From Narcine bancroftii (taxonomy: Eukaryota): 64,000 nucleotides of DNA. Each line of letters opens with the position of its first letter. The stretch's first letter is position 1. The translations under genes were made by a program, and so were the position numbers. Shown one piece after another: positions 7,595 to 58,723 of the stretch. The stretch covers positions 1,302,001 through 1,366,000 of the forward strand of contig NW_027211801.1 in the NCBI RefSeq assembly GCF_036971445.1, read 5' to 3'. The notes under the pieces were generated by a model that had not been told where the DNA came from, ran no database searches, and saw only the letters and a list, made by a program, of their open reading frames with translations.

Positions 7595-8167
7595 ATGATT
7601 GTCTCTGTGCCAAGACTCCTTTGGTCTCTGATGGTCTGGGTTCCAGTTGAGAAGTCAAGAGGTCATTCCCCATGTATTATAACCACCCAACTCCCCTCCA
7701 ACTAAGCTTTTCATTGCACTTTGTTTCCCTGCAAACACACGGTGTCATGTTTATTTGTGTCATTGAAGGTGTCCTGGCATTGGTTAAACTCAATCAGACC
7801 CCAATGTTTGACCCACTCTCCGCGGGACATAGAGCTCACTTGGACTGTCGGCTGGCTGGTGGGAGCGTTGGAAGTTCCCACATGAACTGGTTCTGACAGC
7901 GACCCGGAGAAGCTCGAGAGTGGGTATTGATACACTATATGTCTAACAGTAGCTACTTTCAGGTGGCCACAATACAGAATAATAAAATCTCCCAAGGCCG
8001 CCGGTTCACCAGGCGATTCGACCCATCCAGAGACACCTTGGCCAACACTCACTCCTTGACCATCCTCAGCCTGGAAGCTGGAGATTCAACCATGTCCTAC
8101 TGTGCTACATGGGACAGTTCAGCAAAAGTTTGGGTGTTCGGTCCTGGAACCACATTGATCAGAACAA
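7595..8167 (+). pseudogene. Germline-joined Ig light chain leader + VJ pseudogene (sigma-cart / type I-like)
   Basis: Leader 7595-7646 has its donor changed GT>TT. VJ exon 7769-8167 reads LVKLNQTP...C...WF*QRPG...SYCATWDSSAKVWVFGPGTTLI, with in-frame TGA at 7894-7896 and J donor GT>AT. No RSS between V and J. Confidence 0.93.
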
Positions 8168-12230: not shown

Positions 12231-12599
12231 TATAATGCTGGAGAGACAAACCCACATCATTTACTGACGCCAATAGCTCAGTGGCAGGAGGATTAATCTA
12301 ATTAAAATAGCCAATGGTCCAAGGCCAAGTACAGACAGGCTGCAGTGTCCAGTCCAAGTCATTTCCATGTGGCCAACAGCAAGGTGCGCACTCTTGGGTG
12401 GGGCAGAACCAGAGCTTGATTGGCAGCTGGTGTGTCCTCCGACAATGTAGGGGAACAGTGCTGTCACATGACAGCCACAACCCTTCCCACCACAAGCCTG
12501 AAGGCCTAAGAATTTAGAAAATATCCATCAATCATCTCGGACCAGTGTGGTGCAGATGGAACTAACCATAGATGGGGTTTTTGGCCATTCTAGTACCAG

Positions 12600-13545
12600 A
12601 GAAAATTAGAGCACAGAAACAAACACTTCAGCCCATCTCATCTGTGCCAAATGAGATTCTGCCTTGTCCCACTGACCTGCACCCATTCCGTTACCCTCTA
12701 TAGCTTCAAATCCATGTACGTCTCCAAATACTTCTTCAATGTTAAAACTGGTCCCACATTCACCACTTCAGCTGTCAGCTCATTCCACACTCCCACTACG
12801 CTGTGTATGAAGAGGTTCCCCCTCATGTTCCCCCAAACTTTTCTCCTTTCATTCTTAGCCCATCTCCTACATTTTGAGGGAAAAGCTGATCTACATTTAC
12901 TCTGTCTATACCCCTCGTAATTAAACAAAACCTTGATCAAATCTCCCTCATTAATACGCTCCAGGGAATGAAGTCCTCACCTGTACAACCCTTCCCTGTG
13001 ATTCAGGTCCAGAATTCCAGCCACTTCCTACTAATTCTTATCTGCACTCTTCAATCTTTCCTGTATTTCAATGACCAAAACTCCACACATTTCTCCATTT
13101 TTGACCCCACCAATATCTTATAAAACTTGACCACAATATCCCCACTCCTGCGCTCAATACTTAGATTTATGAAGGCCAAGATGCTAAAAGCACTCTTTGC
13201 AACCCTATCCACTTTGACCCCACTTCAGGGAATGACGTATCTGTATTCCGAGGCCCCTCTGTTCGACCGCACTCCTCAGGGCCCGACCATTCACCGTGTA
13301 TGTCTTTTCTTGATTTGTCCTTCCAAAGTATAGCACCTCACACTTGTCTGCATTAAATTCCATCTGCTATTTTACAGCCCACTTTTCCAGCTGGTCCAGA
13401 TGCCTCTGCAAGCTTTGAAAACCTTCCTCGCTGTCCACAATGCCTCCAATCTTAGTGTCATCTCCAAACTTACTGATCCAATTCACCACATTATCACCCA
13501 GAGCATTGTTATGACAAACAGCAATGCCCGCAGCACTGACCCCTG
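12600..13545 (-). mobile_element. CR1 LINE 3' fragment
   Basis: NWISKFGDDTKIGG...QLEKWA RT motif and a CR1-type 3' end. Confidence 0.8.
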
Positions 13546-19316: not shown

Positions 19317-19642
19317 CTACACACAGGATAACGACGAGATGGACTCGCGCAGAGGCGAGCTCAGTGAGCTGTGGCTCACGATGCAGGTATAGCTGGAGCC
19401 TGTGTTCCAGGCAGTGGCGGACACATGCAGGTAACTGCTCTGCTTGTAGGTCTGGTCAGCATCAGGGGATGCGACACCCGTCGTCACCCCGCTCTCTGTC
19501 TCGACCCCATCCACGCTCCACCGGAGTGACGCGAAGCCTGGCTTAAAGCCGCTCACCAGGCAAGACAAGGTGGCCGAGCCTGAGTCGGTCTCATTCTGGG
19601 AGGGAGGGAGCAGTTGAACCGAGGGTTTCCGAGAGTCGCTAC
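19317..19642 (-). CDS. Ig light chain constant exon (sigma-cart / type I / NS5-like), intact
   Basis: Acceptor ttctgctctcccacacag at 19643, phase 1. Reads SDSRKPSVQLLPPSQNETDSGSATLSCLVSGFKPG...RWSVDG...YTCIVSHSSLSSPLRESISSLSCV*, with both domain Cys, the Trp and the penultimate interchain Cys. Confidence 0.95.
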
Positions 19643-20695
19643 CTGTGTGGGAGAGCAGAAGGGAAACATCATTAGGTGATGAAGTCCAAACACCAACACC
19701 AACTCTGAATAAAAGATCCCATGGACATGAACACGATGGCCTTTATAAATCAAAGTATTGAGTACAGGAGTTGGGATGTTTTATGGTAAATTAGAGTAAA
19801 ACATTGGTCACGAACTAGGATTGAAAGAGTGTAGAGAACATTTACTCGGATGTTAACAGGACCTCAGGAACAGAGTTACAGAGAAAGGTTAAACAGGCTA
19901 GAACTTTATTCCCTGGGGAAAGGAGAATGAGGGAGATTTGGTAGACATATTTAACGTTATGAGACAGAGAAAATGCTTTTTCAACTGACGATAAGTAACA
20001 TACAAACCAGAGGACATGGGTTCAGGATGAAAGGGGATATTTTGGGGAAGTAGAATGGGGAAGTAGAATGTAAAAAAATAATCTTCTTCCTTCTGACATC
20101 AAAAAAACACAAATATGAAGAAATTAAATTTTATCCCCTTAATTTTTCTAGAATTAAATATAATTGATTAATAAAATTATAATGAACTCACCGATAAATG
20201 ACATTTATAATTTTAGTCATACTAAATTCATCCAATCATTTTGATGAATAAATATTCCTTCATCTTTTACCCATTTCAACCTATATTTATGCAAATCCAA
20301 CATAGACATTTTATTCTGTAATAAAGAATACATCGCAGATCTAAATCCCTTCTTACCTCCCTCTGTAAGTAAAATTTCAAACTTTGATCAACTAGGTAAC
20401 CGTAAAGTATGTCCCAAATTATCCAACAATAAAACATTAAATTGATAATAAGAAAAAAGAGTATTTGAAGGAATATTATTTTTCTCTTTCATTCTTTGGA
20501 AAGAAATAAAATAACCTGCTTCATAAGAATCTTGTACAAATTTAATACACTTTTGATCCCATAACTTCAAAAAATGATTATTGTGTAAAGGAAAAAAGCT
20601 TATATTGATACAAAGGAGTTTTATCTGAAATCTTCCCTTGAGTACCTAGAACTTCATTTATTTTATACCATAGTTGCAAAGTATGTTTCAAATTC

Positions 20696-20881
20696 TTGGG
20701 CTTGGCTTCGCGGACGAAGATTTATGGAGGGGGTAAAAAGTCCACGTCAGCTGCAGGCTCGTTTGTGGCTGACAAGTCCGATGCGGGACAGGCAGACACG
20801 GTTGCAGCGGCTGCAGGGGAAAATTGGTTGGTTGGGGTTGGGTGTTGGGTTTTTCCTCATTTGCCTTTTGTCAGTGAGGTG
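20696..20881 (-). mobile_element. Short RTE 3' fragment
   Basis: Near-identical to the 3' ends of the other RTE copies (cttggcttcgcggacgaagatttatggagg...). Confidence 0.9.
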
Positions 20882-20912
20882 AGGGTTAGGGTTAGGGTTA
20901 GGGTTAGGGTTA
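20882..20912 (+). repeat. Interstitial telomeric repeat
   Basis: AGGG(TTAGGG)4TTA, perfect. Confidence 0.95.
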
Positions 20913-23900
20913 TTTCATCAAAAAGAAGCTGATCCATCCTCTTCTTACCAATTTGAGATCATTCACTATTTGTCCATATCAATGACTTTTCCAAATCAAA
21001 CATCCTTTTAATAAATTTCACTGTGCCACATCATAGTAATTTAGAAAATTCAGAAGTTGTAAACCTCCTCATTCATATTTCCAGGTTAATTTTTGTAAAG
21101 ATACCTTTGCCATCGCATCTTTCCATAACAATTTGCTCACCATGGAGTTCAAATCCTTAAAAAAATTAGTGGGAATCTTACAAGGAATAGATTGAAATAG
21201 ATTCTGAAAATGAGGAAAAATGTTCATTTCAATACATTTAACTCTTTTTATTAAAGTAATTGGTAAATATTTCCATTGATTGAAGTCATTTTTAATTTAA
21301 AAAATAATGGTAAATCATTTATTTCATATAAATGACTATAATTACTATCTTCCTGAACACCTAAATACTTCATTTGATCCAACCATTTAAATTTAACAAT
21401 ATGTTTAGAAAGAGAATAATCTATTGCCTCTAATGGACTAATCTCACTTTTTTCCCAAATGATTTGACAGCCTGATATTTCTCCATACTGTTTCAGTCTG
21501 TCATGTAACCACTTCAAAGAATTCTGAGGTTTGTTAAGAATATCAAAACATCATCCACAAACAAATTAATTTTAAATTCATCAAACTTCACTTTAATATC
21601 TACAATATTACCATCTTGCATAATCATCTGAGCCAAAGATTCAATAACTAATGCAAAAAGAGCTGGTCACAAAGGACATCCTTGTCTAGTTGATCAATTC
21701 AACAGAAAAGGTAAAGAGAACTGTGCATTTGTCAAGACTCTAGCAATAGGATTTTTTAATATAATGCCTTAATCCAACAAGTAAATCTTGGACCAAATGT
21801 AAATTTCTACACAACGTTTAAAAAAAAAACTCCACTCAACTCCATCAAAGGCCTTCTCTGCATCCAATGAAATAACCAATGGTAGTTTGGATTCCTCCCA
21901 AGAAATCTTAATCAAAGAAAACAATTCTGCTGAATTTATAAAGAATGTTATTCTGCTGAATAACAATTTTTAATAAATCTAGCCTGATCCAAATGAATTA
22001 AATCTGGTAAATATTTTGCCAATCTATTAGCTCTTCTTAGCTAGAACCTTTGTTATAACCTTATAATCAGAATTCAACAACGAAATTGGTCGATAAGACC
22101 CATCTTTCAATGGATCCCAATCTTTTATTGAATAAATGGTTATATGGTTATATGGTTAACTATTGTAATAGCTTGAGAAAATGAATCTGGTAAAGAGTGA
22201 ACTTCCATTCCTTGTTTCAATACATCTATTAACAATAGCATTAATAAATCTTAAATACTGGATCTTATGGACCAATTTCTTTGTGAAATGTTGGTTACAA
22301 AATTGTAACTAAGGTTCTAGCAAATTGATTGAGGAAACACTTACCAGGTTTAATACATTTAGATCAAGCTGGTGTTATTAAAAATCATTATTCTTCAGAT
22401 ACTATTGCAATATCAATTAGTATGATTCCTATTTCTTGGGAGGAATCCAACTGACCAGTGGTTTTATCATTAGATGCCAAAAAGGCATTTGATCGGAGAG
22501 AGTGGAGTTTTTTATTGAAGGTATTAAAAAGGTTTGGGTTTGGACCAATGTTTATTCATTGGATTGAATCTTTCTATCAAAAAGCTTTTGCCAGATTGGG
22601 GACGAATGGTCAAATATCATCATGTTTTTATTACAACGATTGAGTAGACAAAGTTTCCCTTTGATTCTTGCATTGTTTGCATTAGGTATTGAAACCTCGG
22701 CTCAATTCATAAGACAAGAAAATAATATTAAAGGTGTTAAAGTGAAATCTGAGGAGTATAAGACTAATTTATTTCCAGATGATGTTTTGGTTTACTGAAC
22801 AGAAACTCAGAATTCTTTGAAATCACTATGTGAAAGATTGAAACAACATGGAGAAATATCTGGCTATAACATTGATGAGGGAAGAAGTTAGATTCTGCCA
22901 TTGATGGTGATGATCCTCATTGTGAAATGATTGTTCAATTTAAATGGTCAGATCAAATTAAATTTTTAGGTATTAGATTGGATAGGAAATTGGATCATTT
23001 TTATGAGTTAAATTAATTGCCTTTATTTCATAAAATCAAGAGTGATTTAAATAGATGAAAGATTTACCTCTCGCATCAATAGATAGAGTTTTTTTTGTGA
23101 AGATGGATATCTTTCCTAGAATATAATATCTTTTTTAATCTATACATTGTAAATACCACAAAAGTTTCTTTGGGATTTGAATTCTACAGTTAGAAAGTTT
23201 ATTTTTATGGAAAGATATCATGTTGAGAGAATCTTTACAAAAATTAATGTGGAGGTATGAACTGGGAGATTTACAACTAACTAATTTTCACAATTATTAA
23301 AGAGGAGCACAATTAAAATGTATTAATAGAATGTTGGACTTGGATTATCCATTGGTTTGGGCTAATACTGTGTTATACACAATTGGTGAGAAGAAAAATA
23401 AGCAATTTATTGATAAATGGAATTCCAAGTTATTATTCACATAAAATTCACCTATTTTGAGACATTTAATTGAATGATAGAAAATGATAAATGACGAAAT
23501 AGGTAAACCGGGGAAAATTTCAGCTAAGACAACTTTATACCCGAATAAACCTTTTCCTTTTACGCTTAATAATCAAAATGTGAGATCAGAAAGGAATTAA
23601 AATTGTACAAGATTGTTATGAAGCTGATTATTTAATGTCTTTTCAAAGAATGAAGGAAATTCCACAAAGTACTTTTTTTTGTTATTCCCGAGTTAGAGCT
23701 TCACTACTGGATAATTTGGGACATTCTTTAATGTTGCCAAGGCAGTTAAAAGTTGAAATTTGGCTTATGGAAGGTGGGAAGAAAACAATTTGTGTCTGAA
23801 ATGTATTTGTTATTACAGAATAAAATGCCTAAATTAGATTTATATAAGTCGAGATTAAATAGGGAAAAGGATTTTGGGATCATAGTTGATCAGGAATTTT

Positions 23901-24439
23901 GCGGTAATTTATGTAAAGATAGTGTGACTAAGATTGTTAATGTGAGATAAGTTGCTTCATTATAACTTTATACATCAGTGATATTTAACCCCTGAAAAAT
24001 TAAAGAGATATAATTTAATTTCTTCAGATTTATGTTTCAGGTGTCATAAGGAAGTAGCTTCTTTCCTACATTCTACTTGGTTATGTGATTATGGTGAAAC
24101 ATTATTGGACACGACTAAAAAAGTTTTTTAGGGAAAGTTCTTAAGAATAAATTGGACCCAACATGATTTTTGTGAAGTGATGTTAAAATGTTGACCTTGG
24201 AATTGAGATTAACTGGGTATCAAATTGCGTTGGGGGCCCACACACACCAATCTGGGGGTCGGGGTGAGGTGACTTTCCCAGGTCAAACCTCATCTGGCTG
24301 AGGGGGATCTGCAGAATCTGTCTCCAGCGCGGGGTCTCGACAGTTTACTGACATCTTCTGTGCTCACGGACAAAATGAATGAAAGATAGATTCTCAGATC
24401 TGGAAATAAAAGTCCGAAAAGTTCCCTGAGTTCACTCAC

Positions 24440-24802
24440 TTGTTACGATCAACGTGGATCCAGGGCCGAACACGTATTCGTTTGCTGAACCGTCCCATGT
24501 AGCACAGTAGTAGACGGCGGAGTCTCCAGCTTCCAGGCTGCGGATGGTCAAGGTGTGAGTGTTGGCCGAGGTGTCTCTGGACGGGGCGAATCGGCTGGTG
24601 AACCCGCTGCCTCGGTAGATATCATTATCCGGTTGGTGTTCCAATACCCACTCTGGAGCTTCTCCGGGTCGCTGTCGGTACCAGTTCATGTAGTAACTTG
24701 CAACGCTCCCCCCCTCCAGCCGACACTCCAAGTGGACGGTCTGTCCCGCAGAGAGTGGGTCGGACATTGGGGTCTGATGGAGTTTAACCAACGCCAGGAC
24801 AC
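24440..24802 (-). CDS. Germline-joined VJ exon of Ig light chain (sigma-cart / type I / NS5-like), intact
   Basis: Acceptor cattgcag and donor gtgagt; 363 nt, phase 1 to phase 1. Reads VLA-LVKLHQTPMSDPLSAGQTVHLECRLEGGSVASYYMNWYRQRPGEAPEWVL...RFAPSRDTSANTHTLTIRSLEAGDSAVYYCATWDGSANEYVFGPGSTLIVT. QTP.SDP.SAG, WYRQRPGEAP.WVL and RF.PSRDTS match recalled elasmobranch type I V motifs. Confidence 0.95.
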
Positions 24803-24928
24803 CTGCAATGACACAAAAAACACCGCAGCGGGTGAACGCGGGAAAACAAGGCGCGGGAAAAAGGTCCAACCCGGCTCAGTTCGAGGGGAGGGGATAGCAT
24901 CAACGGGGAATGGCCCCCGACTTCTCAC

Positions 24929-24977
24929 CTGGAACCCAGACCATCAGAGACCACAGGAGACCCAGCGCAGAGACCAT
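24929..24977 (-). CDS. Leader exon of the intact light-chain gene
   Basis: ATG at 24977, MVSALGLLWSLMVWVP-G, 49 nt, donor gtgag, 126-nt intron. Spliced CDS is 49+363+326=738 nt. Confidence 0.93.
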
Positions 24978-25200
24978 CGCTCCGGACAGGTGAAGACAAA
25001 GCAGCGCGATTGGGTTCCTCGAACTCCCGGAGTCGCTCCGGTTCTCCCGTCTGCAAAGCGGCTCCGGAGGCTCTGTTTAAGAAGGGGTGTCCATGAGGGG
25101 GAGGGGTCAGGAGGACGCCGTGGGGCGGAGAATCACCCCATCTGGTTGTGGTCCCTGAAATGTTCTCGGGTCACATACATGACACAAGACAGACTTTTTC
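24978..25200 (-). promoter_or_regulatory. Light-chain promoter and 5' UTR
   Basis: TATA-like TTAAA at 25076-25080, GC box near 25121, E-box 25139-25144, Runx-type TGTGGT 25147-25152, TCATGTATGTGA 25171-25182. Homologous in three copies. Confidence 0.7.
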
Positions 25201-25849
25201 CCGCGGGAGGGGCAGAATTAGCACTAATGACACAGACACAGACAGTGCCCTCCATCAGAGAACATGACAGCACGGAAACAGGCCCTTCGGCCCTTCCAGT
25301 CTATCTAAACCATTTTATTGGCATGGTCCCACTGACCTGCACACAGCCCACAGCCCTCCATACCCCTCACATCCAAGTATCTATCTAAATTCTTCTTAAA
25401 TATGAACATTGACCCCCCCTCCCATCCATGACCCTTCCCACATTCACCACTTCAACTCATTCCACACTCCCACCAATCTCTATGTGAAGAATTTCCCCAG
25501 AACCTTTCCCCTTTCTCCCTTAACCTACGTCTTCTGGTCTCTATCTCACCTACCCTCAGTGGAAATATCTTACCTACATTTATTCTGCAAAATCCCCATC
25601 ATAATTTGAAATAGCTCCATTAAATCTCCCCTCATTCTTCTACAGACAAGGTAATAATTCCTAACCTTGACCAAAACATCCCAACTCCTGTACTCAATAC
25701 TTTGATTTATGAAGGTGAAAGTGCCAAAAGCTCACTTTACGCCCATATCCCTCTGTGATGCCACTTTGAAGGGATGATGTATCTCTATTCCCAGGACCCT
25801 CTGTTTACTGCACTCCTCAGTTGAGGATGTTTGGTATTAAGATGCTTTT

Positions 25850-26510
25850 TCCACTATTTGCCCCTGTTTTCCACAGTTTTCAATGTAATCCGATAATTCC
25901 CATGCAATTAAAGTGAAGATTCCAGATTTTATTCAAGGTTATTTTTACACATTTTGTTTTGACCAGGGAGAAATTACAGCCCTTAGTTGCGTCATTTCAG
26001 GGAACCATAACATTTGGGACATTTGGCTTCACAGCTGTGTGTTAGAACTCAGGTGTATTTAATTGCTTCATTGGTGCAGGTACAAATGAGCGAGGCTTGC
26101 TCTAATCATTTGGAGTCTGTGGTTGCCATCTTTCTACACGAGGACCAAAGTTGAGCCAATGAAAGTTAAAGAAGCCGGTAAACCAGAATAAAACACTGAG
26201 AAACATCGTAAAACCTTAGTCTCCTGTGGACAGTCGTCATTGACGTATCCAGACTTGCCTCCTGAAGAGTGTTTCTGATCTGTCCGACAGGAGTTTGTGG
26301 ACTTTTCTTCATTCTGCTGAGATTTCTTCTGTCATCAAGAGTGGAGGTTTTCCTTGGTCGACCAGTCCCATTGCTATGACTGAGATCACCAGGACCCTAT
26401 TTCTTTTTAATCATTCTGGTCATCCTAAGGTTTGGGCGATGTCCCTTACTGTTTTATTCTGGTTTTTCACCCTCACAGGTACTTCTTTGACTCTCATTGG
26501 CACATGTTTG
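25850..26510. mobile_element. Internally deleted Tc1/mariner-like DNA transposon remnant (paralog ~37380-38090)
   Basis: Decayed transposase N-terminus (..RTKVEPMKVKEA / IMRLENQNKTVR) joined to an inverted transposase fragment. Confidence 0.55.
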
Positions 26511-29500
26511 TGACAATAAATCATGATTCTGGCTGATTTCTCTCCACAGGTACTACTTTGGTGCCAGCAACCCTCTATTTATTCATTTATTTATTTTGCA
26601 ATTCATCAGGTGGCTTTTAACAACGTGGACATAATTAACAAAAAGATATCAACACTCTCAGTTCCAGCCATGTAAACTTTTCAGGAGTTCAGGGACTTGA
26701 ATATTGGCCTTCAGTGTTGGAGGGATTGAATTTTGGAGCAGTCAGGTTGTGTTGTCTGGTGAGGCTGCATCTGGAGAATTGCCCCAGTTCTCATCTCTTA
26801 ACTTGAGTAAGGATTAATTGGTTCTGGAGGCGGTGAAGAGGAGATTCAGCAGGTTGGCCTTTGAAGTCATCTGGAATTGCACTCACTGGAATTTAGGTGA
26901 ATGACAGTGGATCTAATAGAAATGTCTAAAATTATGAAAGGCATAGATAAGATAGAGGTAGGTAAGTTGTTTCCATTGGTGGGGAAAGATCAGAACATGG
27001 GCACTTAACGCAAGATTCAGGGGAGTAGAGTTAGGACATTGATTTGGAGGAACTCCCTTTCCCCGAGATTGGGGAATCTGTGGAATTCACTGCCCATTGA
27101 AGCATTCGAGGTGACTTCAGTAAATATATTGAAGGCAAAGTTGTGTACAATTTTACATAATAGGGGAATTAAGGGATTTGAGGAAAAGGCAGGTTGGTGG
27201 AGATGAGCCCATCATCAGTTCAGTCAAAAGGTTTGATGTATCTGGGACTTGTTCCCTCCTCCCTCACCCTCAGGCCTAGTCAGGCAATGGTTTCCAGGTT
27301 TGAAAAGACAGCTGCCTTTTGTGGTTCTCATTAGCTCCCTCTGGGACGCTGGCGGTGTTGTCCGAGCCTTTATTTAGCTGCCACTACACAAATCTACACT
27401 GTTTTTAATCATGCAGGCAGGTGTTGTGGTCACTTGGCTCTAGCAGTTGTTGAGAGGGCAGGGAGGAGACAGAAAGGGAGAGAGTGCTGATGTGGGGCAG
27501 CACGTTTATAATTCTGGAATCATTAATGCTCCACCATTTACTGCAAGGCTCTGGGTGAAGGTATTAAAGATAAACATAACAGTTCTGAGGCCATTCAAGT
27601 ACTGAACTTCAGTCTGGGAGCAAAGGCCGAGAGGGAGGCAGAAACAGCGGAAACTCGGTGTTAGGGACAGGACAGGGGCAGTGATTGCGTGGTTGTAATG
27701 GGCCGAAAAGCCATTAAAGTGGTAGCAGATTATTGCTTCTCAGACTGGAGGCCTGTGACTAGTTGTGTGTCTCAGGTATCAAGGCTGGACCCATTGCTGT
27801 TGGTTTTTCTTTGACTATTTGATTAAAAATTTTAAAACCACAACATTAAGTCAATAATGAATTTTACATATATATGCATATATATATAAGACAATACATG
27901 TGGTATATATACTAATCCCTACTCCCTCCCCAACACCCACCTCCCTTCCAATACTCTTCAGAAAGAAAGATGTCAGAGATTATGAATGAATATATGTTCA
28001 AATTAACCCCTGTGAAACCGAGTCCCACCAAGAGGATGAGCTGTTGAGAGCTGAAATTTTCAAAAACACTTGTTGTAAATATGGGCTCCATATTTATGGG
28101 GTCCTTAATATTTATCACTTAAATTCTAAGTTAACCTTTGAAGAGGAAAGCAGGATCTCATTTCAGTATGTTATCTCTGCATCCACAAATCCGTATCAGA
28201 CTTCCAAGTAATAGCAAGTTGTAAAAATTCAATTTGATAAATGTTTTACCTTAATGTTAAACTAAACATTTTAATATATCCTAATAGAAATAACTTTAGG
28301 TCTAATGGAAGTTTAACCTTTAACACTTTCTCTCAACATGCTTTAATACACGGCCAAGTCGAGTGAACAAATGAACCTATGATGTCTCAAACATAATTCA
28401 TAAGAAATTCAATTAAATATTTTTAATTTTTCAGGTGTTAAATATAATTGATCTAAAAAGTTATATTGTTCTAATCTGCATCTTGCATTGATGATTTTAG
28501 TCATATTATCTATACATAACATTCTCCAATCATCTTGATCTATTATCCTACCTAAATCAGTTTCCCACTTTAATCTTGATCTACAAATATCTGATTTAGA
28601 CATTTTCCTTTGAAGTAATTTAGACATTTCTGAAATAAATTTCTTAATACTCTCTTTAGTAAGTAAAATTTCTACCTCAGACTGGCAAGGTAATCTTAAA
28701 CTTTGACCTAATTTATCAATTAATAAAGTTTTAATGTGATAACAAAAAGGTATTATTTTTAGTTGAAAAGAAATATAATAACCAACTTCAAATCAACTTT
28801 CTATCATTTGAATCCCTATTTGATTCCTATCTTTATAAATTGATTATTAACAGTCAAAATAAAAAAATTATTTTGATATAAAGTTGTTTTACATGAAATC
28901 TAACCTTTCCCACCTATTTCATAATCTATTTTATTCCATAATTCAATTAAAAATTTCAGTATTAGTGGGTCCTTACTTCAATTAAAATTCCATTAATAAA
29001 TCTGAACTGAGCAGCGTTATAATAATTTGGAAAAGTGGAAGCTGTAAAATGTCGCACTGCTAAAGGCAGAGCTGCTGAATTAAATGCTGTCCACACCAAG
29101 CACGTAAACCAGTATCTGCCATTTATTCAAACCACGCGCGTTCCTTTTTAGTGGGGGCGAGAGGGGCAACAGGCTCATGGGGGTGATGTCATAATGCAGC
29201 TGTAAGGCCTGGTCATTCCCCTGGCAACGTGCTCCTGCAGCCTGGAACTTCAGTGCGGTGGGAATCAAGTCTCTGTGCTCTCCCGTGTTGGTTGTTTGCT
29301 GCAGTGATTTGGCCAGTCATGTGTGTGTTTGACCTGGCTCACTACAGGACCCAGTGATTGAAATTTCCAAATTAATTTCTCTAAGGAAATTCTTACCATT
29401 TTACCTTTCTAATTAAACAGATCCTTAAAATGTTTTGATGTATATTGTAAGGAATGGATTGAGAAAGATATTGAATGCTTGGGAAAATATTCATCTTGAT

Positions 29501-32713: not shown

Positions 32714-35293
32714 TGTTGTGAACTGTGATTCACTATTAATGTGCTGTACTGACGACTGGTCCCACTTCCCTGCTCCTCCCCCTGTTACCTGTATCTAACC
32801 CTAGTTTCACACCTAAACCCAGAACCCAACTGAAGCCTATTCATGACCCCTACATGTGTTGTAATGTAATAAAAGTGTATGTTTTCCCTCCAGTCGAGTG
32901 TGAGCTTTTATCTCCACGACAATTTTATTAGCTGACAAACAAGGATGGAGATGTTACTCAAGCCAAGTTTGCTGCTAATAGACCCCCAGTCTCCTGAATG
33001 CGGCTGTGGAGTTTTCATATTGGCTAGACTGCTTCCAGGCCTACCTGAACTCGGCCAGGGACGTCTTCCATACAGACAAACTCTGGAGTTCAGCGGCCAT
33101 GACAAGGGTAGGGACGAACGGGTACGTAGTCGTCCGAGATTTCCCGATGTACGAGCCCACCATCGAGGAGCTGAATGCCCACTACATAAAAGCCCGGAAT
33201 GTGGACCTAGTGAGGCACTGGCTTGCCCTACGACGCCAATGGCCCGGAGAGTCGATTGAGGACAACGTGCTGGTTATGCGGACACTGGCTAAGAAGAGCA
33301 GGTATGTGGCCACCTTAGGCCACATCTGGAAAGCTAAACAGATCCAGAACACTCTGGCCGTGGGGGTCCACGTCAGGCATGTGAGGCAGCAATTGCTTGA
33401 GTCAAGAAGGAAAAACATCATTAGCCATGTCACGCTGGCCAAATCTCTGGAACAGGTCAGTCTCGAGAACAATGTCCTCGTGGCGTACGAGATGGCACTC
33501 TCGGGTGAGCACCTCCAAGGACCGGATCCTCCCTCTAAAGGCAGCTGCCTCCTGAACCCAGGAGTGCTTTTTCTGCAACAAGGGACAGCATCCCGTTGCC
33601 TGCTGCCCAGCCAAAGACTTGCGTGCTCCAGCTGTGAGAAGAAGGGACATTGGGTGAGGGAGTGCCGCGCAAAGGGAGGTCCGGCTTCCAGTACCAAGAC
33701 ATCTGCCCCGGGCTCACCCAAGATTGCCTGCTGCGCATCCCGCTGCCTACAGAAATAGTGCAAAAATCAAGAATGACATCGAGAATGACAACATTTCTTT
33801 GTGGATGATTGAACTCTCCACCGAGAATTTTGGGCATCACCTACCGGCCAGGAAGCCCTTAACCACACTTCAGATGCCTTGTCCAGGGGGTGCTGTGCAT
33901 CCGCATACACCGGTCAACTGTGGACCTTACAGAATATGCTCTGCCACCCAGGGGTCACCCGCATGGCTCATTTGATCAAGTCCCGTAACTTTCCCTATGC
34001 TTTGGAAAACGTCAGGTCATGCCAGGTCTGCGCTGAGTGTAAGTCGCACATTTATCACCCAGCAAAAGCACACCTGATCAAGTCATTCAGGCCCTTTGAA
34101 CGGCTCAGTATCAATTTTACAAGACCTTGCCTCTCCACGAACTGGAATATATGATTTCATTCATCGATGATTACTCCCACATCCCGGTCGCCATCCCGTG
34201 CTCAGGCACACCTGTTACGTCTGTTATGAAAGCCCTAGATTCTATTTTCAACCTGTTCAAGTGTCCCAGCTATATTGATAGTGACAGGGGCTCAGCCTTC
34301 ATCAGCGAGGAGCTGCCTCAGTTCCTGCTGGTGGGTGCATCATGTCCAACAGGACAACCAGTTACAAACCCCAGGGGAACGGGCTGGTTGAAAAAGAGAA
34401 TGCCCCGATCTGGAAGGCTGTCAAACTTGCCCTGAAGCAAGAAGGCCTTCCAGACTCATGCTGGCAGGATGTCCTCCCCATCGCGCACCACTCCATTTGG
34501 TCGCTACTCTGCTCTGCGAACAAACCTACTGCTCATGAGCTCACGTTTACATTCAACAGAAGGTCGACATCAGGGAGTAAGCTCCCAGCTCGGCTCAGTA
34601 GTCCTGCTCCGGTCCTTTTCAAGAAGCACGTGAGGAGAAGTAAGGTGGAAAGGGTGAAATTGCTCCATGCCAACCCCACCTACGCCTACATTCCATACCT
34701 TGATGGTAGGGAGGACACCATCTCCGTCAGGGACCAGACACCTGCTGGAACAGAGGATCCATTGCCTCAGAGGCCCCACAAACTACTGAGCTTTTTCTCC
34801 CCACCCCTGCTCGGGGCCTCACGGGACCTGGTTTTGGAGGAGAGTGAATCCACCTCCATTGTCGAGCTGGAGCCCTAGCCCACTAACCTTCCATCACAGA
34901 CGGACCACGAGACTCAAAGATCCCATTACACCTCGGTGCTAAGGCACTTTACCAGGATCTCCAGACCCCTGGACCTCCTCAATCTGGAAATACTATCATA
35001 AATATTTCTCTTCTGTGTCTCTTCCTAGCTATTGATGCTTGTTCTCATCATCCACAGACCCTTAATTCTGAAGGAAGGGGTGAATGTAGTGAAATGGGAT
35101 TCACTAGAAGTGTGCTGTAGTGATGACTGGTCCTGCCTCCCAGCTCGTACCCCTGGAGCCTGTATATAAACCCTGGTTTCCTGCCTAAACCCAGAACCCT
35201 ACTGAAGCCTATTCGTGAACCCCATCTGTGTTGTCAGCTAATAAAACCATTTGTTCTCCCTCCAGTCGAGTGTGAACTTTAATCAACGCCACA
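32714..35293 (+). mobile_element. Internally deleted Gypsy-type LTR element with both LTRs (32714-32921, 35085-35293)
   Basis: Paired ~208-bp TG...CA repeats, PPT gaaggaaggggtgaa at 35070-35084, gag with CSSCEKKGHWVREC knuckle, integrase (SDRGSAFIS, PQGNGLVEKEN). No protease or RT. Confidence 0.88.
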
Positions 35294-35475
35294 TGTGTTG
35301 AGGTGACTTTTCAAGGGTCAAACCTCATCTGGCTTAGGGGGATCTGCAGAATCTGTCTCCAGTGCTGTTTCTTGACAGTTTACAGACATCTTCTGTGCTC
35401 ACGGACAAAATGAATTTTTTTAAAAATTCGCAAATCGAGAAAGAAATGTCCCAAAATTTACTTGAGTTCACTCTC

Positions 35476-35513
35476 TGGTAACGACCAATATCGTTCCAGG
35501 GTCGAACACCTAT
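35476..35513 (-). pseudogene. Unrearranged J segment (pseudo)
   Basis: 38 nt: A TAG GTG TTC GAC CCT GGA ACG ATA TTG GTC GTT ACC A, homologous to VFGPG(T/S)TLIVT. Donor GT>GA. Downstream flank matches the J-C intron of the other copies. Confidence 0.88.
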
Positions 35514-35552
35514 CACTGTGCGATGTTCCAATAGAGAGGACCTCCTAAAATC
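35514..35552 (+). other. 23-bp-spacer recombination signal sequence flanking J
   Basis: Heptamer CACTGTG (35514-35520) abuts J; 23-nt spacer; nonamer CCTAAAATC (35544-35552, 6/9 to ACAAAAACC). Confidence 0.78.
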
Positions 35553-36286
35553 TCCCATGCTCCGACAGGCCGTCTTCAGCACCAATCCCTGCACTGTTCA
35601 GGCGAATCCACATCACAGAAGGAGACCTGAAAGAAAAAATCGAAATGGTCATATCACAAGTAAGGGGAAACATTCAGGTGTGTGCGGGAGAAAGAGTTAA
35701 CACTTAGACTTTGATGAGGCCAAATTTGGAGAATTACATGTATTTGGTCACCAAACTGCAGGAAAGACAACAATAACATTGGAAGGAGATGGGCGGAGGA
35801 TTTACACGGATGTTGCCATGTCTTGAGGAACTCAGTTACAGGGAAAGTTTAAATAGGTGAGGAGTGAAAAAGGAAAGTCTGCAGACGCAATGATTGAAGT
35901 TGGAACAACGGTGGGGAAACTCAGCAGGTCAAGCATCAAACTTTATGTAGCAGAAATAGCCTGAGCCCTTCAACAAGGGCTGAGGGGGCGCACGGACAAA
36001 ATGGTGAGGGGGCGGGGATGGAGCAGGAATCCAAATAGGCAGGAGGTCAGAGGTGGATAAGGGAGGGAGGGCACATCAGCCAACAAGGGGAGGGGGGATG
36101 GGTCTGTGAATGGGGAGGGAAAGGAGGTGGAGAGCTGGAGGGAAGGGGAGATGGAGATGGGGAAGAGAGGGAGAATGGGGAGTCGCTAGTAGTGGGTGGT
36201 CAATCGGCCAGGCAGGCAGGAGAAAGAATCCCGGTGATGGATGTGCGGGCTCTGACAAGAAATCTGAATCTCAGGCCACCCCAGAG

Positions 36287-36314
36287 GGTTTTTGTACAGT
36301 GCGTTCTCAATGTG
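36287..36314 (-). other. 12-bp-spacer recombination signal sequence flanking the V remnant
   Basis: On minus: CACATTG + agaacgcactgt (12 nt) + perfect ACAAAAACC, directly after CAGCAAAGT, which matches the V 3' end of the joined genes. Confidence 0.92.
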
Positions 36315-36419
36315 ACTTTGCTGGAGGGGTCAAGTTATAATAAATGGGGAATGGCCCCCTGACTTCTCACCTGGAATCCAGACCATCATAGACCACAGGA
36401 AACGCGGCGCAGAGATCAT
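36315..36419 (-). pseudogene. Leader exon (36371-36419), partial intron and ~9-nt V remnant of a split light-chain cluster
   Basis: ATG at 36419, MISAPRFLWSMMVWIP-G, intact gtgag donor. Intron homology stops near 36324 and jumps to the V 3' end. Confidence 0.88.
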
Positions 36420-39400
36420 CGGTCCAGACAGGCAAAGACAAAGCTGCGCGATTGGATTCCTCGAACTCCCGGAGCCAATCTGGTTCTAGCGTGTGCAAAG
36501 CGGCTCCGGAGGCTCTGTTTATGAAGGGATGCCCATGAGGGAGAGTTGTCACGAGAACGCTGTGGGGTGGAGAATCACCTAATCTGGTTGTGATCCCTGA
36601 AATAATCAGATTTGTTCTCATATCACATACATGATATAACATAAACTTTCTCCTGCAAGAGAGAGGGATAATTACAGAGACAGACAGTGCCCTCCATCAA
36701 AGAACATTACAGACAAAACAGGCCCTTCAGCCCATCTAGTCTGTGTCGAACCATGTTACTGCCTAGTCCCACTGACATGCACCCCACCCATAGCCGTCCA
36801 TACCCCTCCCATATACTTCTAAAATGTGAACATTGAGCATGCATTCACCACTTTAGCTGGCACCTCATTCCACACTCCCACCGCTCTCTGTGTGAAGTTC
36901 ACCCAAATCTTTTCCCCTTTCTCCCTTGACCCATGTTCTCTGGTCTATATCTCACCTCCCCTCACGGGAAAATCCTGCCTATATTTACTCTGTCTATCTC
37001 CCTCATAATTTTAAATACCTCTATCAAACCTCCATTCATTCTTCTACATTCCAGGGATTAAAGTCCTAACCTGTTTAACCTTTACTTGTACCTCAGTTCC
37101 TGAAGTTGGGGAAACTTCCTAGTAAATCTTCTCTGCTCTCTTTCAATCTTTGTGATAACTTTCCTGTAGTTTGGTGATCAAAACTGCACACAATGCTCCA
37201 GATTTGGTCTCACCAATATCTCATAGAACTTGACCAAAACGTCCCAACTCCTGTTCTCAATACTTCAATTTATGAAGGTCAAGATTCCAAAAGCTCTCTT
37301 TACGCCCCTATACCCCCATGATGCCATGTTCAGACAATGATGTATCTATATTCTTAGGTTCCTCTGTTCTCCCCTACTGGAATGTTTCGAACTAAGATGG
37401 TTTTTCCCTTTAATTACATGTGAATTGTCTGATTTCAAGTTGAAAACTGAGGAGAACAGCAACAAATAAAGTCCACATTATTTGTACACAGTTTGGTTTG
37501 ACCATGGAGAAATTACAGCCCTTTTTATCCATAGTCCCATCATTTCAGCGAACCATAACGTTTGGGACATTTGACTTCACCGCTGTTTGTGAGAACTCAG
37601 GTATGTTTAATTGCTTCATTGGTGCAGGTATAAGTGAGCGAGACTTGCTCTAAGCGTTTGGAGTCTGTGGTTGCCATCTTTCTACACGAGGACCAGAGTT
37701 GAGCCAATGAAAGTTAAAGAATCCATTATGAGGCTGGAAAACCAGAATAAAACAGTGAGAGTCATCGTCAAACCTTAGTCTCCGATGGACAGTCGCCATG
37801 ATGTATCCACACCTGCCTCCTGAAGAGTGTTTCTGATCGGTCCGACAAGAATTTGGAGAATCTTCTTCATTCTGCTGAGATTTCTTCTGTCATCAACAGT
37901 GGAGATTTTTTTTGGTCGACCAGTCCCATTGCATTGACTGCGATCACCTGGATCCTTTTTCTTCTCAATGATGTTCCAAACAGTTGATTTTGGTCATTCT
38001 GAGATTTGGGCGATGTCCCTTACTGTTTTATTCTGGTTTTCCACCCTCACAGTCACTTCTTTGACTCGGATTGGCATGTTTGTGCCAATATATCCTGATT
38101 CTGATGGATTTATCTCCACAGATGCTACTTGGCTGGCTGAGTCCTTCCAGTCACCCTTCACTTTTATTTATTTTGCTTTTCATAAGATGGCTTTTAACAA
38201 CGTGGACATAATTAAGGAAAGGAAATCAGCACTGGCGTTTCAGCCATGGATACATTGCAGGAGTTCAGGGACTGGAATCTTGGCCTTCAGTTCTGGATGG
38301 ATTGAATTTAGTAGCAGGCAGATTGTGCTATAACTATACAAAGTCCTGCTCAGGCTGCATCTGGAGAACTGCAGCAGTTCTGGTCTCCTTACCTGAGGAA
38401 GGATGTACTGGCTTTAAAGCGGTGCAGAGGACGTTCACCAAGTTGATTCCAGAGATGAAGGGGTTGGCCTATGAAGAGAGAATGAGTCGTCTGTGTCTGC
38501 ACTTGCTGGAATTTAGAAGAATGGGACGGGATCTTACAGAAATGTATAAAATCATGAAATGTATAGATAAATAGAGGTCGGTGAGTTGTTCCCATTGGTG
38601 AGGGAGACCAGAACAAGGGGACTTTGCCTCAAGATTCAGGGGAGTAGCTTTAGGATAGAGATGAGGAGGAACTGCTATTCCCAGAGGGTGGGGAATCTGT
38701 GGAATTCGCTGCCTATTGAAGCATTCCAGGCAACCTCAGTAAATATATTGAAGGCAAGGTTGTTTTGATTTTTAAATAGTAGGTGAATTAAGGGATATGG
38801 GGAAAAGGCAGGTCAGTGTAAATGAACCAATCATCAGGTTAGAGAAAAGGCATGATGTATCTGGGAATTGTTCCCTCCTCCCTCAACCTCAGGCCTAGAC
38901 AGACAATGGCTCCCATGGTCGAGAAGACAGCTGCATTCTGTGGTTCTCATTAGATCCCTCTGGGGACCTTGGCGGTGTTGCCCAAGCCTTTACTTAGCTG
39001 CCATTACACAAATCAACAATGTTTCTAATTCTGCAGGCAGGTTTTGTGGTCACTGGGCCCCAGCAGTTGGTGAGGGGGGAGGGGAAGGGGCAGGAAGGGA
39101 GGGAGAGCTGATGTGGGCTGTGTGTTTATACTTCTGGAAATATTAATGCTCAACCATTTACTGCGAGGCTCTGGATGAAAGTATTACAGATAAACATTGC
39201 AGTCTGGAGATAAACACATCAGAATAAAGTACTGAGATTCAGTCTGGGAGCAAAGGCCGAGAGGGAGGCAGAAACAACAGGTAGTCGGTGTAAGAGACAG
39301 GGCAGGGGGCACTGAGGGTTGTAATGGGACAAAAGGCAATTAAAGTGGTAGCAGATTATTGCTTCTCAGACTGGAGGCCTGTCACTAGTGGTGTGTCTCA

Positions 39401-39559
39401 GGGATCAGGGCTGGGGCCATTGCTGCTTGGTTTTATTAATTTTTTTTATTTAAATGTTTAAAATCATAATTTTCAATCAATAATGAATTATATATATATG
39501 ATAATACATGTGGTGTATATACCAATCCCTCACTCCTTCCTCCCTTTGAGCCCCCACCC

Positions 39560-49800: not shown

Positions 49801-51015
49801 TTAAGCTGAGGAAGGGGCAAGTTGGACGAGGGAGGAGAGAACTGGTGGGGAAGGGAAGAGAGCCAGGGGAGGGGTAAGTGGAGAGGGTGGGGAGGAGTGT
49901 ACAGGGGGAGGGGAGAGAACCGGGATGTGGGGGGAAGAGGTTTATGGGGAGAGGGGTCAGGGACCGCTTTGAATTAGTGAATGGGTAGACATAGACATAC
50001 CTACCTGCCGAAGTCACAGAGCTTTAACACAGCCGTCTCGGGATCCACCAGCATATTCTGGGGCTTTATATCTCAAAGGCAAACCCCAAAATCATGGATG
50101 TAGGCCAGGCTCTGGAACAGCTGGGTCATGTACACCTGGCAACACAGCAATGCAGCATTTCCCACCCAGCCCAGTGCCTCCACTGGCTGGGCCTAGTCCC
50201 AGGGCTGGGGGGAGGGGATGGATCATTCTACATCCATCCTCATCACCCCCTCCACCCCTCCCCCACACCTTCCCTTCCCTCCTCATCAATACCCAGTGAG
50301 ACCCTCATTCGCCCCTCATCAAAAAGTTCCCAGTGAACTCCTGCATATCCTCCAACCCCGCCCCGCCCTCCTCTCTGAGTGCCTGCTGCCCCCAGTGGTC
50401 AACACCACATGGCCAGAATCCAAGGGCTCAGTTAGTAGAGCATTGACGGGCCGTAGTGGACCCATTGCCTCCCTCATCAACCGGCTTCTGGTGAGACTAC
50501 ACAAAGTGGGCAGCTCCAACCACCCTGGGTGGTGGGTGGGGCCGAACGTGTGGAGGCCAAATTGTTTGGATGATTTAGAGCAGCCATTGATTCGTAAGGG
50601 CACTAAATGAGGTTATGGGGAAAAATCAATTCATGATATGAATGGGGGAAACAGACTCAAGGGGCTGAGTGGCCTAATTTGGATCCCTTGTCTTGTGGTC
50701 TTAGCTGCTGCTGTTTGGAGTTGAAATTGCAAGAGTTCATAAGTTAATGGGTGTGGAGCTGTACAGTGGAGTCAGCAGGACAGCCAGCATCCAGGGGTAG
50801 GCACTGGGCGGAGGGGTAGGTCGGAGGAAACAGAGAGACTTCAGTGAGATGGATAGATTCAGGGAATGGAGAAAGAAACAGCAAATGAAATACAGTGAGT
50901 AGGGGTGGGGGGGGGGGCACGCGGGACTTATCTCGTCACCGGAGGAGTAGAAGAAGTAGAGGAGAGTGACAATGTTGGTGTGATCCAACTTCCACACGAT
51001 CTGCAGTTTGTGGTT
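46827..51015 (-). pseudogene. GSK3A: Intron-containing glycogen synthase kinase-3 (alpha-like) pseudogene fragment
   Basis: Exon 50932-51015 (84 nt): NHKLQIVWKLDHTNIVTLLYFFYSSGDE. Exon 50005-50135 (131 nt): [42 protein letters not shown]. Exon 47902-47978: FICSRYYQGQELIFGAIEYPS. Exon 46827-47014: VFK...VALCSQLLQ*TP...ELCDPSSRLPNGWELPP. VYM, GVC and LVDP favour alpha over beta. Confidence 0.88.
47735..47780. repeat. (CT)n microsatellite
   Basis: Direct reading. Confidence 0.95.
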
Positions 51016-51309: not shown

Positions 51310-51475
51310 NNNNNNNNNNNNNNNNNNNNNNNNNNNNNNNNNNNNNNNNNNNNNNNNNNNNNNNNNNNNNNNNNNNNNNNNNNNNNNNNNNNNNNNNNNN
51401 NNNNNNNNNNNNNNNNNNNNNNNNNNNNNNNNNNNNNNNNNNNNNNNNNNNNNNNNNNNNNNNNNNNNNNNNNNN
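51310..51475. other. Assembly gap (166 N)
   Basis: Run of N. Confidence 1.
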
Positions 51476-58300: not shown

Positions 58301-58410
58301 ATAATTTCTGAAGGCCATATGTTCATGTCAGTGGAATCTTTTATTCAGAGTTGGTGTCAGAGCTGGGATCTCATCACCTAATGATACCTCCCTTCTGCTC
58401 TCTCACACAG

Positions 58411-58723
58411 GTTGCAAATCTCGGAAACCCTCGGTTCAACTGCTCCTGCCCTCCCATGATGAGACCAACTCAGGCTCAGCCACCGTGTCTTTCCTGGTGT
58501 GCGGTCTTAAGCCAGGCTTTGCGTAGCTGCGGTGGAGTGTGGATGGGGTCTAGACAGAGAACGGGGTGATGATGGGTGTCGTGTCCCCGGATGCTGACCA
58601 GACCTACAAGCAGACCAGTTACCTGAGTGTCCTTGAACAAAGGCTCCAGCTATACCTGCATCGTGAGCCACAGCTCGCTGAGCTCGCCTCATCATTATCT
58701 CATCATTATCCTGTGGGCAGTGA
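58411..58723 (+). pseudogene. Ig light chain constant-exon pseudogene
   Basis: Paralog of 19317-19642 with intact acceptor. First Cys TGC>TTC, two in-frame TAG, a net 11-nt frameshifting deletion near 58625, rearranged C-terminus. Confidence 0.93.

What the first reader, a model, noticed from the sequence alone, without database searches (positions are those of the whole stretch)
35476..36419. Fossil unjoined (RSS-bearing) light-chain cluster next to its germline-joined paralogs
Seen: on minus the order is promoter, intact leader, ~45 nt of intron, V 3' end CAGCAAAGT, 12-RSS (CACATTG-12-ACAAAAACC), ~735 nt spacer, 23-RSS (CCTAAAATC/23/CACTGTG read on plus), 38-nt J, then J-C intron. None of this appears in the ORF track. 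Known: sigma-cart / type I clusters use V-12/J-23 signals; they occur split in sharks but are described as germline-joined in skate, and joining is attributed to RAG action in germ cells. Inference: this is a surviving pre-joining template of the same family as the two joined genes, so the before and after states of a heritable V(D)J event sit within 30 kb.
Basis: partly seen in the sequence, partly recalled or inferred. Interest (0 to 1): 0.9.

Follow-up and report, generated by a model that had tools for sequence, protein, structure and literature searches.

The report
Dead unjoined antibody light-chain cluster relic
An electric-ray genome keeps a broken antibody light-chain gene whose V and J pieces are still separated by both recombination signals, next to sister genes in which V and J are already fused. 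This supports the accepted view that fused genes arose from split ones in the germline, but it is a diverged sister copy and not their direct parent.

Summary
On the minus strand lie a conserved upstream region, an intact leader, 47 nt of leader intron, the last 9 nt of V, a 12-RSS, 734 nt, a 23-RSS, a 38-nt J, and 177 nt of J-C intron.

- **Organism and family:** the window is from the electric ray Narcine bancroftii, not a skate. The family is type I / sigma-2 (sigma-cart).
- **State:** the cluster is dead. About 390 bp, the V body, are deleted. The J reads FDPG instead of FGPG, has an in-frame TAG, and has GA in place of the GT donor. No C exon follows.
- **Support:** short-read contigs from another DNA sample carry the same leader / V-end / 12-RSS junction, so it is not an assembly artefact.
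- **Relation to the joined genes:** the relic differs by K2P 0.19-0.26 from both joined neighbours. It is a sister lineage, not their template.
- **The joint:** all five joined copies share one CDR3 length. That length equals the relic's V end plus its J with no net gain or loss, which suggests one old, precise germline joining.

[quoted passage not shown] This scan also noted two similar relics elsewhere in this genome. I rate it a new member of a known kind, of moderate interest.

The parts
36420..39540 (-). Upstream and promoter region shared with gene 1 (and, up to about 37150, with gene 2). It includes a repeat copy at about 36698-37281.
   Evidence: blastn 36340-37072 vs 24899-25667 (76%) and 37229-39540 vs 25666-27929 (78%). 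Alignment A1 columns 56-296.
36371..36419 (-). Intact leader exon (MISAPRFLWSMMVWIP + G), followed by a GT donor at 36370-36369.
   Evidence: Read. Aligned to the leaders of gene 1 and gene 2.
36324..36370 (-). First 47 nt of the leader intron. Homology to the paralogs' introns ends at ...CCCCTCCA.
   Evidence: Alignment A1 columns 343-391.
36315..36323 (-). Last 9 nt of the V exon, CAGCAAAGT. The rest of the intron and the V body (about 390 bp relative to gene 1) are deleted, with a 2-nt CA overlap at the junction. A second allele reads CAGCAAAGGT.
   Evidence: Compare gene 1 ...TTCAGCAAACGA and gene 2 ...TTCAGCAAAAGT. The insertion allele is in DNA runs X1 and X3 (table 4).
36287..36314 (-). 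12-RSS: CACATTG, 12 nt, ACAAAAACC.
   Evidence: Only match in the window, with 0.01 expected.
35553..36286 (-). V-J intervening DNA, 734 nt. It is partly C-rich and of low complexity, and partly repeated in the genome. A cryptic splice acceptor lies at 35627/35626.
   Evidence: DNA depth by bin and the leader-to-35626 joint in run X5.
35514..35552 (-). 23-RSS: GATTTTAGG, 23 nt, CACAGTG, flush with the J.
35476..35513 (-). J segment, 38 nt. It reads FDPG instead of FGPG, has an in-frame TAG at nt 2-4, and the splice donor after it is GA instead of GT.
35299..35475 (-). Remnant of the J-C intron. Homology to the paralogs stops at about 35299, beside a high-copy repeat (35085-35284) and a decayed retroelement (32714-35284).
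   Evidence: blastn 35299-35513 vs 24265-24477 (82%) and vs 8343-8133 (79%)..
19317..24977 (-). Gene 1, an intact germline-joined sigma-2 light-chain gene: leader 24977-24929, VJ exon 24802-24440, C exon 19642-19317.
   Evidence: Each exon matches XP_069768335.1 / P0001. Pfam V-set and C1-set.
7769..8167 (+). Gene 2, a germline-joined VJ pseudogene. Its leader donor is TT, FR2 carries a TGA, and the J donor is AT.
58411..58723 (+). Orphan dead C exon of the same family, with no V or J beside it. The first Cys is Phe, there are in-frame stops, and 2-nt and 9-nt deletions.

Best explanation
This is the decayed remnant of an unrearranged (split) type I / sigma-2 immunoglobulin light-chain cluster in the electric ray Narcine bancroftii.

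When it was intact, the cluster read promoter, leader, V, 12-RSS, about 0.7 kb, 23-RSS, J, intron, C. RAG would have cut at the two heptamer borders, joined the V and J coding ends, and removed the 801 bp between them.

The same reaction in a germ cell of a sister copy produced the fused VJ genes that now make up the working family. These are gene 1 here, three near-identical paralogs on the same scaffold, and the dead gene 2.

The relic lineage stayed split and then died:
- A deletion of about 390 bp, with 2 nt of overlap, removed the V body.
- The J lost the first glycine of its FGXG motif and its splice donor.
- The cluster is cut off about 177 nt after the J, so it has no C exon.

It encodes nothing today. 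It is a sister, not the parent, of the joined genes.

Shown: the anatomy, the homologies, the defects, the divergence, and the presence in a second DNA sample. Inferred: RAG as the agent, a single joining event, and the order of events.
For: - Anatomy and coordinates.
- The 12-RSS is unique in the window, with 0.01 expected. The 23-RSS lies flush with the J.
- Only three J copies are present, all at light-chain loci.
- Block homology with both joined genes lies on either side of a relic-specific insert.
- Gene 1 equals NCBI XP_069768335.1 of N. bancroftii. It is 64% identical (E 6e-102) to Leucoraja type I light chain.
- Junction: gene 1 reads CAGCAAACGA+ATACGTGTTCGG and gene 2 reads CAGCAAAAGT+TTGGGTGTTCGG. 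The relic reads CAGCAAAG(G)T | RSSs | ATAGGTGTTCGA. With the 10-nt allele the lengths are equal, and about 3 mismatches in 17 nt is roughly what about 20% divergence predicts.
- The four annotated paralogs and gene 2 share the same CDR3 length. They have W, Y or L where the relic has TAG.
- K2P: relic to gene 1 0.19-0.20, relic to gene 2 0.23-0.26, gene 1 to gene 2 0.14-0.18.
- A contig from another DNA sample bridges 36115-36400 at single-copy depth.
- Literature: type I is split in horned shark and all joined in skate. It is mixed in nurse shark. Joined genes are attributed to RAG-like activity in germ cells with little TdT (PMC2193156, PMC5192425, PMC2192082 abstract).
Against: - The V end is only 9-10 nt, so its homology rests on 7-9 matching bases plus its position beside the heptamer.
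- Three copies without an outgroup cannot be rooted. Branch counts are relic 56, gene 2 44 and gene 1 22, and the difference is not significant. 'Sister lineage' and 'one joining event' are therefore parsimony arguments.
- No read or contig spans the whole relic.
- I could not count split and joined clusters in the whole genome.
- RAG cleavage of these RSSs is untested.
Confidence: 0.85

Rival explanations
1. One reading: the relic is the true parental template. Gene 1 and/or gene 2 were copied from this very cluster and then joined, so the before and after of one and the same event lie side by side.
For: The relic and gene 1 are tandem on the same strand, about 11 kb apart. They share more than 3 kb of upstream homology. 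The coding-end borders fit the joints.
Against: The relic is the most distant of the three (K2P 0.19-0.26, against 0.14-0.18 between the joined genes). All five joined copies have one junction length and pattern, which fits one joining before their spread. Three further joined copies lie elsewhere on the scaffold.
Confidence: 0.12
2. Reverse direction: a joined VJ gene was split again. An excised fragment with signal ends was put back by RAG transposition, so the relic is derived and not ancestral.
For: RAG can reinsert excised DNA in vitro (discussed in PMC2193156). The joint and the relic are exactly colinear.
Against: There is no target-site duplication: the flanks are ...AAAGT and ATAGG.... 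The same family is split with RSSs in sharks (PMC5192425), so split is the older state.
Confidence: 0.03
3. Assembly artefact: reads from different clusters were merged into a chimeric leader / RSS / J arrangement.
For: The region is rich in paralogs and repeats. No single contig laid here spans all 944 nt.
Against: Independent short-read contigs from another sample cover 36115-36400 across the odd junction, and 35887-36080 without a mismatch. Depth is single-copy (about 27-60) over the leader, V end, 12-RSS, 23-RSS and J. An RNA-like run splices the leader at 36371 to 35626 within the same stretch.
Confidence: 0.03
4. The relic is not inert. It is transcribed, and its near-consensus RSS pair is still cut by RAG in lymphocytes or germ cells, as a non-coding substrate.
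For: Run X5 (RNA by guess, but with GT..AG joints) shows the leader spliced to a cryptic acceptor at 35626. It also shows high contig depth over 36379-36565 and 35444-35630, where DNA depth is single-copy. CAC and the nonamer A-run are kept in both RSSs. A 1-nt indel polymorphism lies one base from the heptamer.
Against: Contig depth is not an expression level. Part of the transcript starts at an exon 13-15 kb upstream (51889-51915), so the relic's own promoter need not be active. No coding or signal joint was among the joints listed. The indel, G versus GG, can be simple slippage.
Confidence: 0.1

Closest known systems
Nurse shark sigma-2 (NS5 / type I) loci: two split, one germline-joined, one pseudogene (summarised in PMC5192425)
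   Same: Same light-chain type. Split and joined clusters coexist in one genome, and one locus is dead.
   Different: In nurse shark the split genes work and rearrange. Here the only split copy seen is a wreck, and the working genes are all joined. The host is a batoid, not a shark.
Nurse shark NS4 (kappa) split/joined pairs such as S10/R7 and S31/R4 (Lee et al. 2000, PMC2193156)
   Same: A joined gene can be compared with a split relative. The RSSs are cleanly gone from the joint, and there is little or no N addition. The V-J intervening DNA is of similar size (about 500 bp there, 734 nt here).
   Different: Those pairs are up to 99% identical and date to about 7-49 Myr. Here the split copy is about 20% diverged and non-functional, so the joint can be compared only in outline. 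The isotype also differs.
Skate (Raja/Leucoraja erinacea) type I light-chain clusters: at least 89, all germline-joined (PMC2192082 abstract)
   Same: Same isotype (gene 1 is 64% identical). Both are batoids, and the joined genes are the working genes.
   Different: No unjoined type I gene was found in skate. This ray keeps one, though it is dead.
Horned shark type I clusters, split (per PMC2193156 and PMC5192425)
   Same: Layout V, RSS, short spacer, RSS, J in one cluster. The closest shark proteins are 63-68% identical.
   Different: Those are intact and rearranging. That their signals are V-12/J-23 is from my memory and was not checked in a paper here.
Other relics noted by this scan in the same genome (s1-876407, 660 kb away, called lambda; s1-878115, on another piece)
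   Same: A joined light-chain gene beside an RSS-bearing broken or unrearranged sibling.
   Different: I could not see their sequences.

Membership tests
Type I / sigma-2 (sigma-cart) Ig light-chain cluster | Sequence kinship of its segments with known type I light chains | tested here: met
   The relic's leader, V end, J and flanks align with gene 1. Gene 1's product is 64% identical (E 6e-102) to Leucoraja type I light chain, and it has V-set and C1-set domains.
Type I / sigma-2 (sigma-cart) Ig light-chain cluster | Complete cluster: leader, V exon, J, and a C exon within a few kb on one strand | tested here: not met
   The V body is deleted. No C exon lies on the minus strand below 35299. 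The only spare C exon (58411-58723, +) is dead and on the other strand. It is a remnant, not a working member.
Unrearranged (split) antigen-receptor gene obeying the 12/23 rule | A heptamer starting CAC flush with each coding end, an A-rich nonamer, one 12-nt and one 23-nt spacer, and signals facing each other | tested here: met
   CACATTG-12-ACAAAAACC after the V end, and CACTGTG-23-CCTAAAATC (read outward) before the J.
Unrearranged (split) antigen-receptor gene obeying the 12/23 rule | The signals are actually cut and joined by RAG | not testable with these tools
   No coding or signal joint was among the listed joints in contigs of two DNA runs, but contigs drop rare forms. No RSS information-content model was available.
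Germline-joined VJ gene | V and J fused in one exon, with no RSS, in non-lymphoid or germline DNA | tested here: not met
   The relic keeps both RSSs and 734 nt between them. Its neighbours gene 1 and gene 2 do meet this feature.
Pseudogene | Defects that preclude a product | tested here: met
   The V exon is missing, the J donor is GA, FGPG has become FDPG, there is a TAG in the J, and there is no C exon. A leader spliced to 35626 would stop after 3 codons.

The most novel reading that the evidence does not exclude
The relic is still a live RAG substrate. It would be an expressed, non-coding 12/23 signal pair inside a light-chain region that is cut and deleted in lymphocytes, or now and then in germ cells. 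The 1-nt indel beside the heptamer would then be a scar of such germline cutting. That would give a neutral reporter of ongoing germline RAG activity in a ray.
Probability: 0.08. Interest if true: 0.65.

Novelty: new member of a known kind. Interest (0 to 1): 0.4.

Why it matters
Reviews state that type I / sigma-2 light-chain genes are all fused in skates and split in horned shark. Lee et al. (2000) called it 'probable, but not conclusive' that the change happened after rays and skates branched off.

A split relic of this very type in an electric ray shows that split sigma-2 clusters with a V-12/J-23 signal pair existed within the ray and skate lineage. The fused genes of this ray match a clean joining of such ends, with no added bases.

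This supports the accepted model of RAG acting in germ cells. It also gives a locus where the joining could be dated once related rays are compared. It does not change the model, and similar relics exist elsewhere in this genome.

Tried and rejected
I could not fetch the loci of the three other Narcine paralogs or of other species' sigma-2 genes, and so could not root the tree.
- **C exon for the relic:** tblastn and blastn found none on the minus strand below 35299.
- **Inversion idea:** I considered an inversion of about 35299-55307 having parted the relic's J from the orphan C exon at 58.4 kb. The layout would fit. But there is no matching intron sequence and no inverted repeats at the supposed breakpoints, and the homology starting at 55308 is a multi-copy repeat. 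I dropped it as unsupported.
- **RAG transposition (re-splitting):** there is no target duplication.
- **RAG-made V deletion:** there is no heptamer-like motif at either breakpoint in the paralogs. The embedded TACTGTG lies 17 nt away. I read it as an ordinary deletion.
- **RSS information-content scoring:** no model or training set was on hand, so I gave consensus matches and shuffle expectations instead.
- **The search of earlier findings by sequence** was blank, which means nothing according to the operators.
- **Anderson et al. 1995:** only the abstract is held.
- **V-12/J-23 rule for horned-shark type I:** I could not confirm it in the papers I could read.
- **Spliced models:** they were searched exon by exon, by reference. 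Only in a local script did I read the leader together with the cryptic exon, to see where the frame stops.

Full report
**What is there**

Read on the minus strand, the stretch holds these parts:
- A conserved upstream region.
- A start codon at 36419 and a 49-nt leader exon ending at 36371, with a GT donor.
- 47 nt of leader intron (36370-36324).
- The nine bases CAGCAAAGT (36323-36315).
- A 12-RSS at 36314-36287: CACATTG, 12 nt, ACAAAAACC.
- 734 nt of intervening DNA.
- A 23-RSS at 35552-35514: GATTTTAGG, 23 nt, CACAGTG.
- A 38-nt J at 35513-35476.
- About 177 nt of J-C intron.

**Is it more than chance?**

- The pattern CACNNTG-12-ACAAAAACC has one exact match in the 64 kb, against 0.01 expected from shuffles. 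Even at two mismatches it is the only match.
- The 23-RSS deviates from consensus at heptamer position 4 and nonamer positions 1, 3 and 8. Across the window, sites that good are at chance level (11 found, 8.9 expected).
- The weight of the 23-RSS comes from position alone. Its heptamer abuts the first base of a J whose core occurs, without mismatch, only at the three light-chain loci of the window.
- blastn and MAFFT show clear block homology with the two joined genes. The upstream region, leader and first about 47 nt of intron match. Then comes relic-specific sequence. Then the J and about 180 nt of intron match again.

**Organism and family**

- The VJ and C reading frames of the neighbouring gene 1 were searched exon by exon, by reference. 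They hit XP_069768335.1 of Narcine bancroftii, the lesser electric ray, on a 1.9-Mb scaffold. The match is exon for exon.
- That protein is 64% identical (E 6e-102) to the type I light chain of Leucoraja erinacea.
- It is 63-68% identical to horned-shark relatives, with V-set and C1-set domains.
- The family is therefore type I, also called sigma-2 or sigma-cart. The animal is a ray of the order Torpediniformes, not a skate.

**Why it is dead**

- Relative to gene 1, about 390 bp are missing: the rest of the leader intron and the V exon up to its last 9-10 bases. The break has a 2-nt CA overlap and no heptamer-like motif at either side. I read it as an ordinary deletion.
- The J encodes VFDPGTILVVT, so the first glycine of FGXG is lost. 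It has TAG at nt 2-4. It is followed by GA where the paralogs have the GT donor.
- Homology to the paralogs' J-C intron ends at about 35299. There a high-copy repeat and a decayed retroelement begin.
- No C exon follows on that strand.
- A spare C exon of the family at 58411-58723 (+) is itself dead, with Cys changed to Phe, stops and frameshifts. I could not tie it to the relic.

**Is it real DNA?**

- Logan contigs of two DNA runs from another sample cover 36115-36400 in one piece. That piece crosses the leader, the deletion junction, the V end and the 12-RSS. It carries two substitutions and one inserted base.
- The same runs cover 35887-36080 without a mismatch.
- Depth is single-copy over the leader, both RSSs and the J.
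- The many small differences indicate a different haplotype or animal. The structure is therefore inherited, not an assembly chimera.
- No single contig spans the whole relic, and I had no long reads.

**Relation to the joined genes**

- The junctions read as follows. Gene 1 is CAGCAAACGA+ATACGTGTTCGG. Gene 2 is CAGCAAAAGT+TTGGGTGTTCGG. The relic is CAGCAAAG(G)T, then the RSSs, then ATAGGTGTTCGA.
- With the 10-nt V-end allele seen in the other sample, the joined genes equal the relic's V end plus its J exactly, with no base gained or lost. The mismatches, about 3 in 17, are roughly what the general divergence predicts.
- The three further annotated paralogs on the scaffold, and gene 2, all share gene 1's CDR3 length. 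They carry W, Y or L where the relic has TAG.
- This fits one old joining without N or P addition, followed by duplication. It agrees with the 'little evidence of TdT' seen for germline joints in nurse shark (PMC2193156). Repeated precise joinings are not excluded.
- In shared non-coding DNA the relic is K2P 0.19-0.20 from gene 1 and 0.23-0.26 from gene 2. The two joined genes are 0.14-0.18 apart.
- Three copies cannot be rooted, and the branch counts (56, 44, 22) do not differ significantly. The simplest reading is still that the relic is a sister lineage that split off before or around the joining. It is not the parent copy.
- At shark-like rates, about 20% divergence would mean tens of millions of years or more. 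That figure is my rough inference.

**Transcription, seen in passing**

- One run labelled RNA by guess (X5) shows GT..AG joints on the minus strand. The leader at 36371 joins a cryptic acceptor at 35626 inside the V-J spacer, in several contigs.
- An exon at 51889-51915 joins either 38473 (an exon 38473-38392 that goes on to 36595) or 36597 directly.
- A leader-to-35626 product would stop after three codons (a local translation only).
- The relic is thus part of a spliced, non-coding transcript, which may start far upstream. Contig depth cannot rank its level.
- One contig joins a leader-like end to a sequence identical to the start of gene 1's V exon. It may simply be gene 1's own mRNA partly laid on the relic.

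**Comparison with what is known**

[quoted passage not shown] In nurse shark there are two split, one joined and one pseudogene (PMC5192425).
- At least 89 skate clusters were all joined (PMC2192082 abstract).
- Lee et al. showed mixed split and joined kappa genes in nurse shark. They argued for RAG-like joining in germ cells (PMC2193156).
- The present case is the same phenomenon in a new host group, and for the isotype that is wholly joined in skates.
- This scan also noted two comparable relics in the same genome (s1-876407 and s1-878115). I could not inspect either.

**Limits**

- No RSS scoring model was available.
- The V-12/J-23 rule for the shark family is from my memory.

**Verdict**

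It is a new member of a known kind, of moderate interest.

Noticed in passing
window 7769-8167 (+), leader near 7640-7690: The second 'joined paralog' is a pseudogene. Its leader donor is TT instead of GT, FR2 has an in-frame TGA (TGG TTC TGA CAG), CDR2 has extra bases, and the J donor is AT instead of GT. No C exon follows before a LINE insertion at about 8.7 kb.
   Followed up: partly
window 58411-58723 (+), within block 55308-63576: An orphan sigma-2 C exon with no V or J beside it. It is dead: the first Cys is Phe, there are two in-frame stops, and there are 2-nt and 9-nt deletions. It sits in an inverted duplicate of gene 1's C and 3' region (13.6-21.1 kb). It could be the lost C of the relic or of gene 2, but I found no evidence for either.
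   Followed up: partly
window 36315/36316: A 1-nt indel polymorphism (G versus GG on minus) one base from the 12-RSS heptamer. The longer allele, seen in another DNA sample, restores the reading-frame length of the joined genes. It is either slippage or, less likely, a scar of RAG nicking and resealing.
   Followed up: partly
window 51889-51915 (-), 38392-38473 (-), 36595-36371 (-), 35626 downward (-): A spliced minus-strand transcript in an RNA-like run. An exon at 51.9 kb joins 38473 or 36597, then the relic's leader joins a cryptic acceptor at 35626. It has no long reading frame, so it looks like a long non-coding RNA that has taken up the relic's leader.
   Followed up: partly
window about 50740-50830 (-): A short reading frame LQIVWKLDHTNIVTLLYFFYSSG that resembles the GSK3 kinase motif around KLDHCNIV. 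It has no Pfam hit at E<0.01. Another note of the scan reports a GSK3-like pseudogene 724 kb away on this scaffold.
   Followed up: no
window 20940-23394 and 20061-20661 vs 23487-24078 (gene 1 J-C intron): Gene 1's J-C intron holds a large imperfect palindrome (68% self-inverted over 2.5 kb). It also holds two inverted copies of a 0.6-0.85-kb repeat that occurs at least 6 times in the window.
   Followed up: no
window 36698-37281, 25256-25667, 6927-7352, 57734-58317, 12595-13264: The same repeat of about 0.4-0.6 kb lies just upstream of all three V promoters, and also just upstream of the orphan C exon. It was carried along by the cluster duplications, and its meaning is unknown.
   Followed up: no
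window 51310-51475: A run of 166 N (assembly gap or masked).
   Followed up: no
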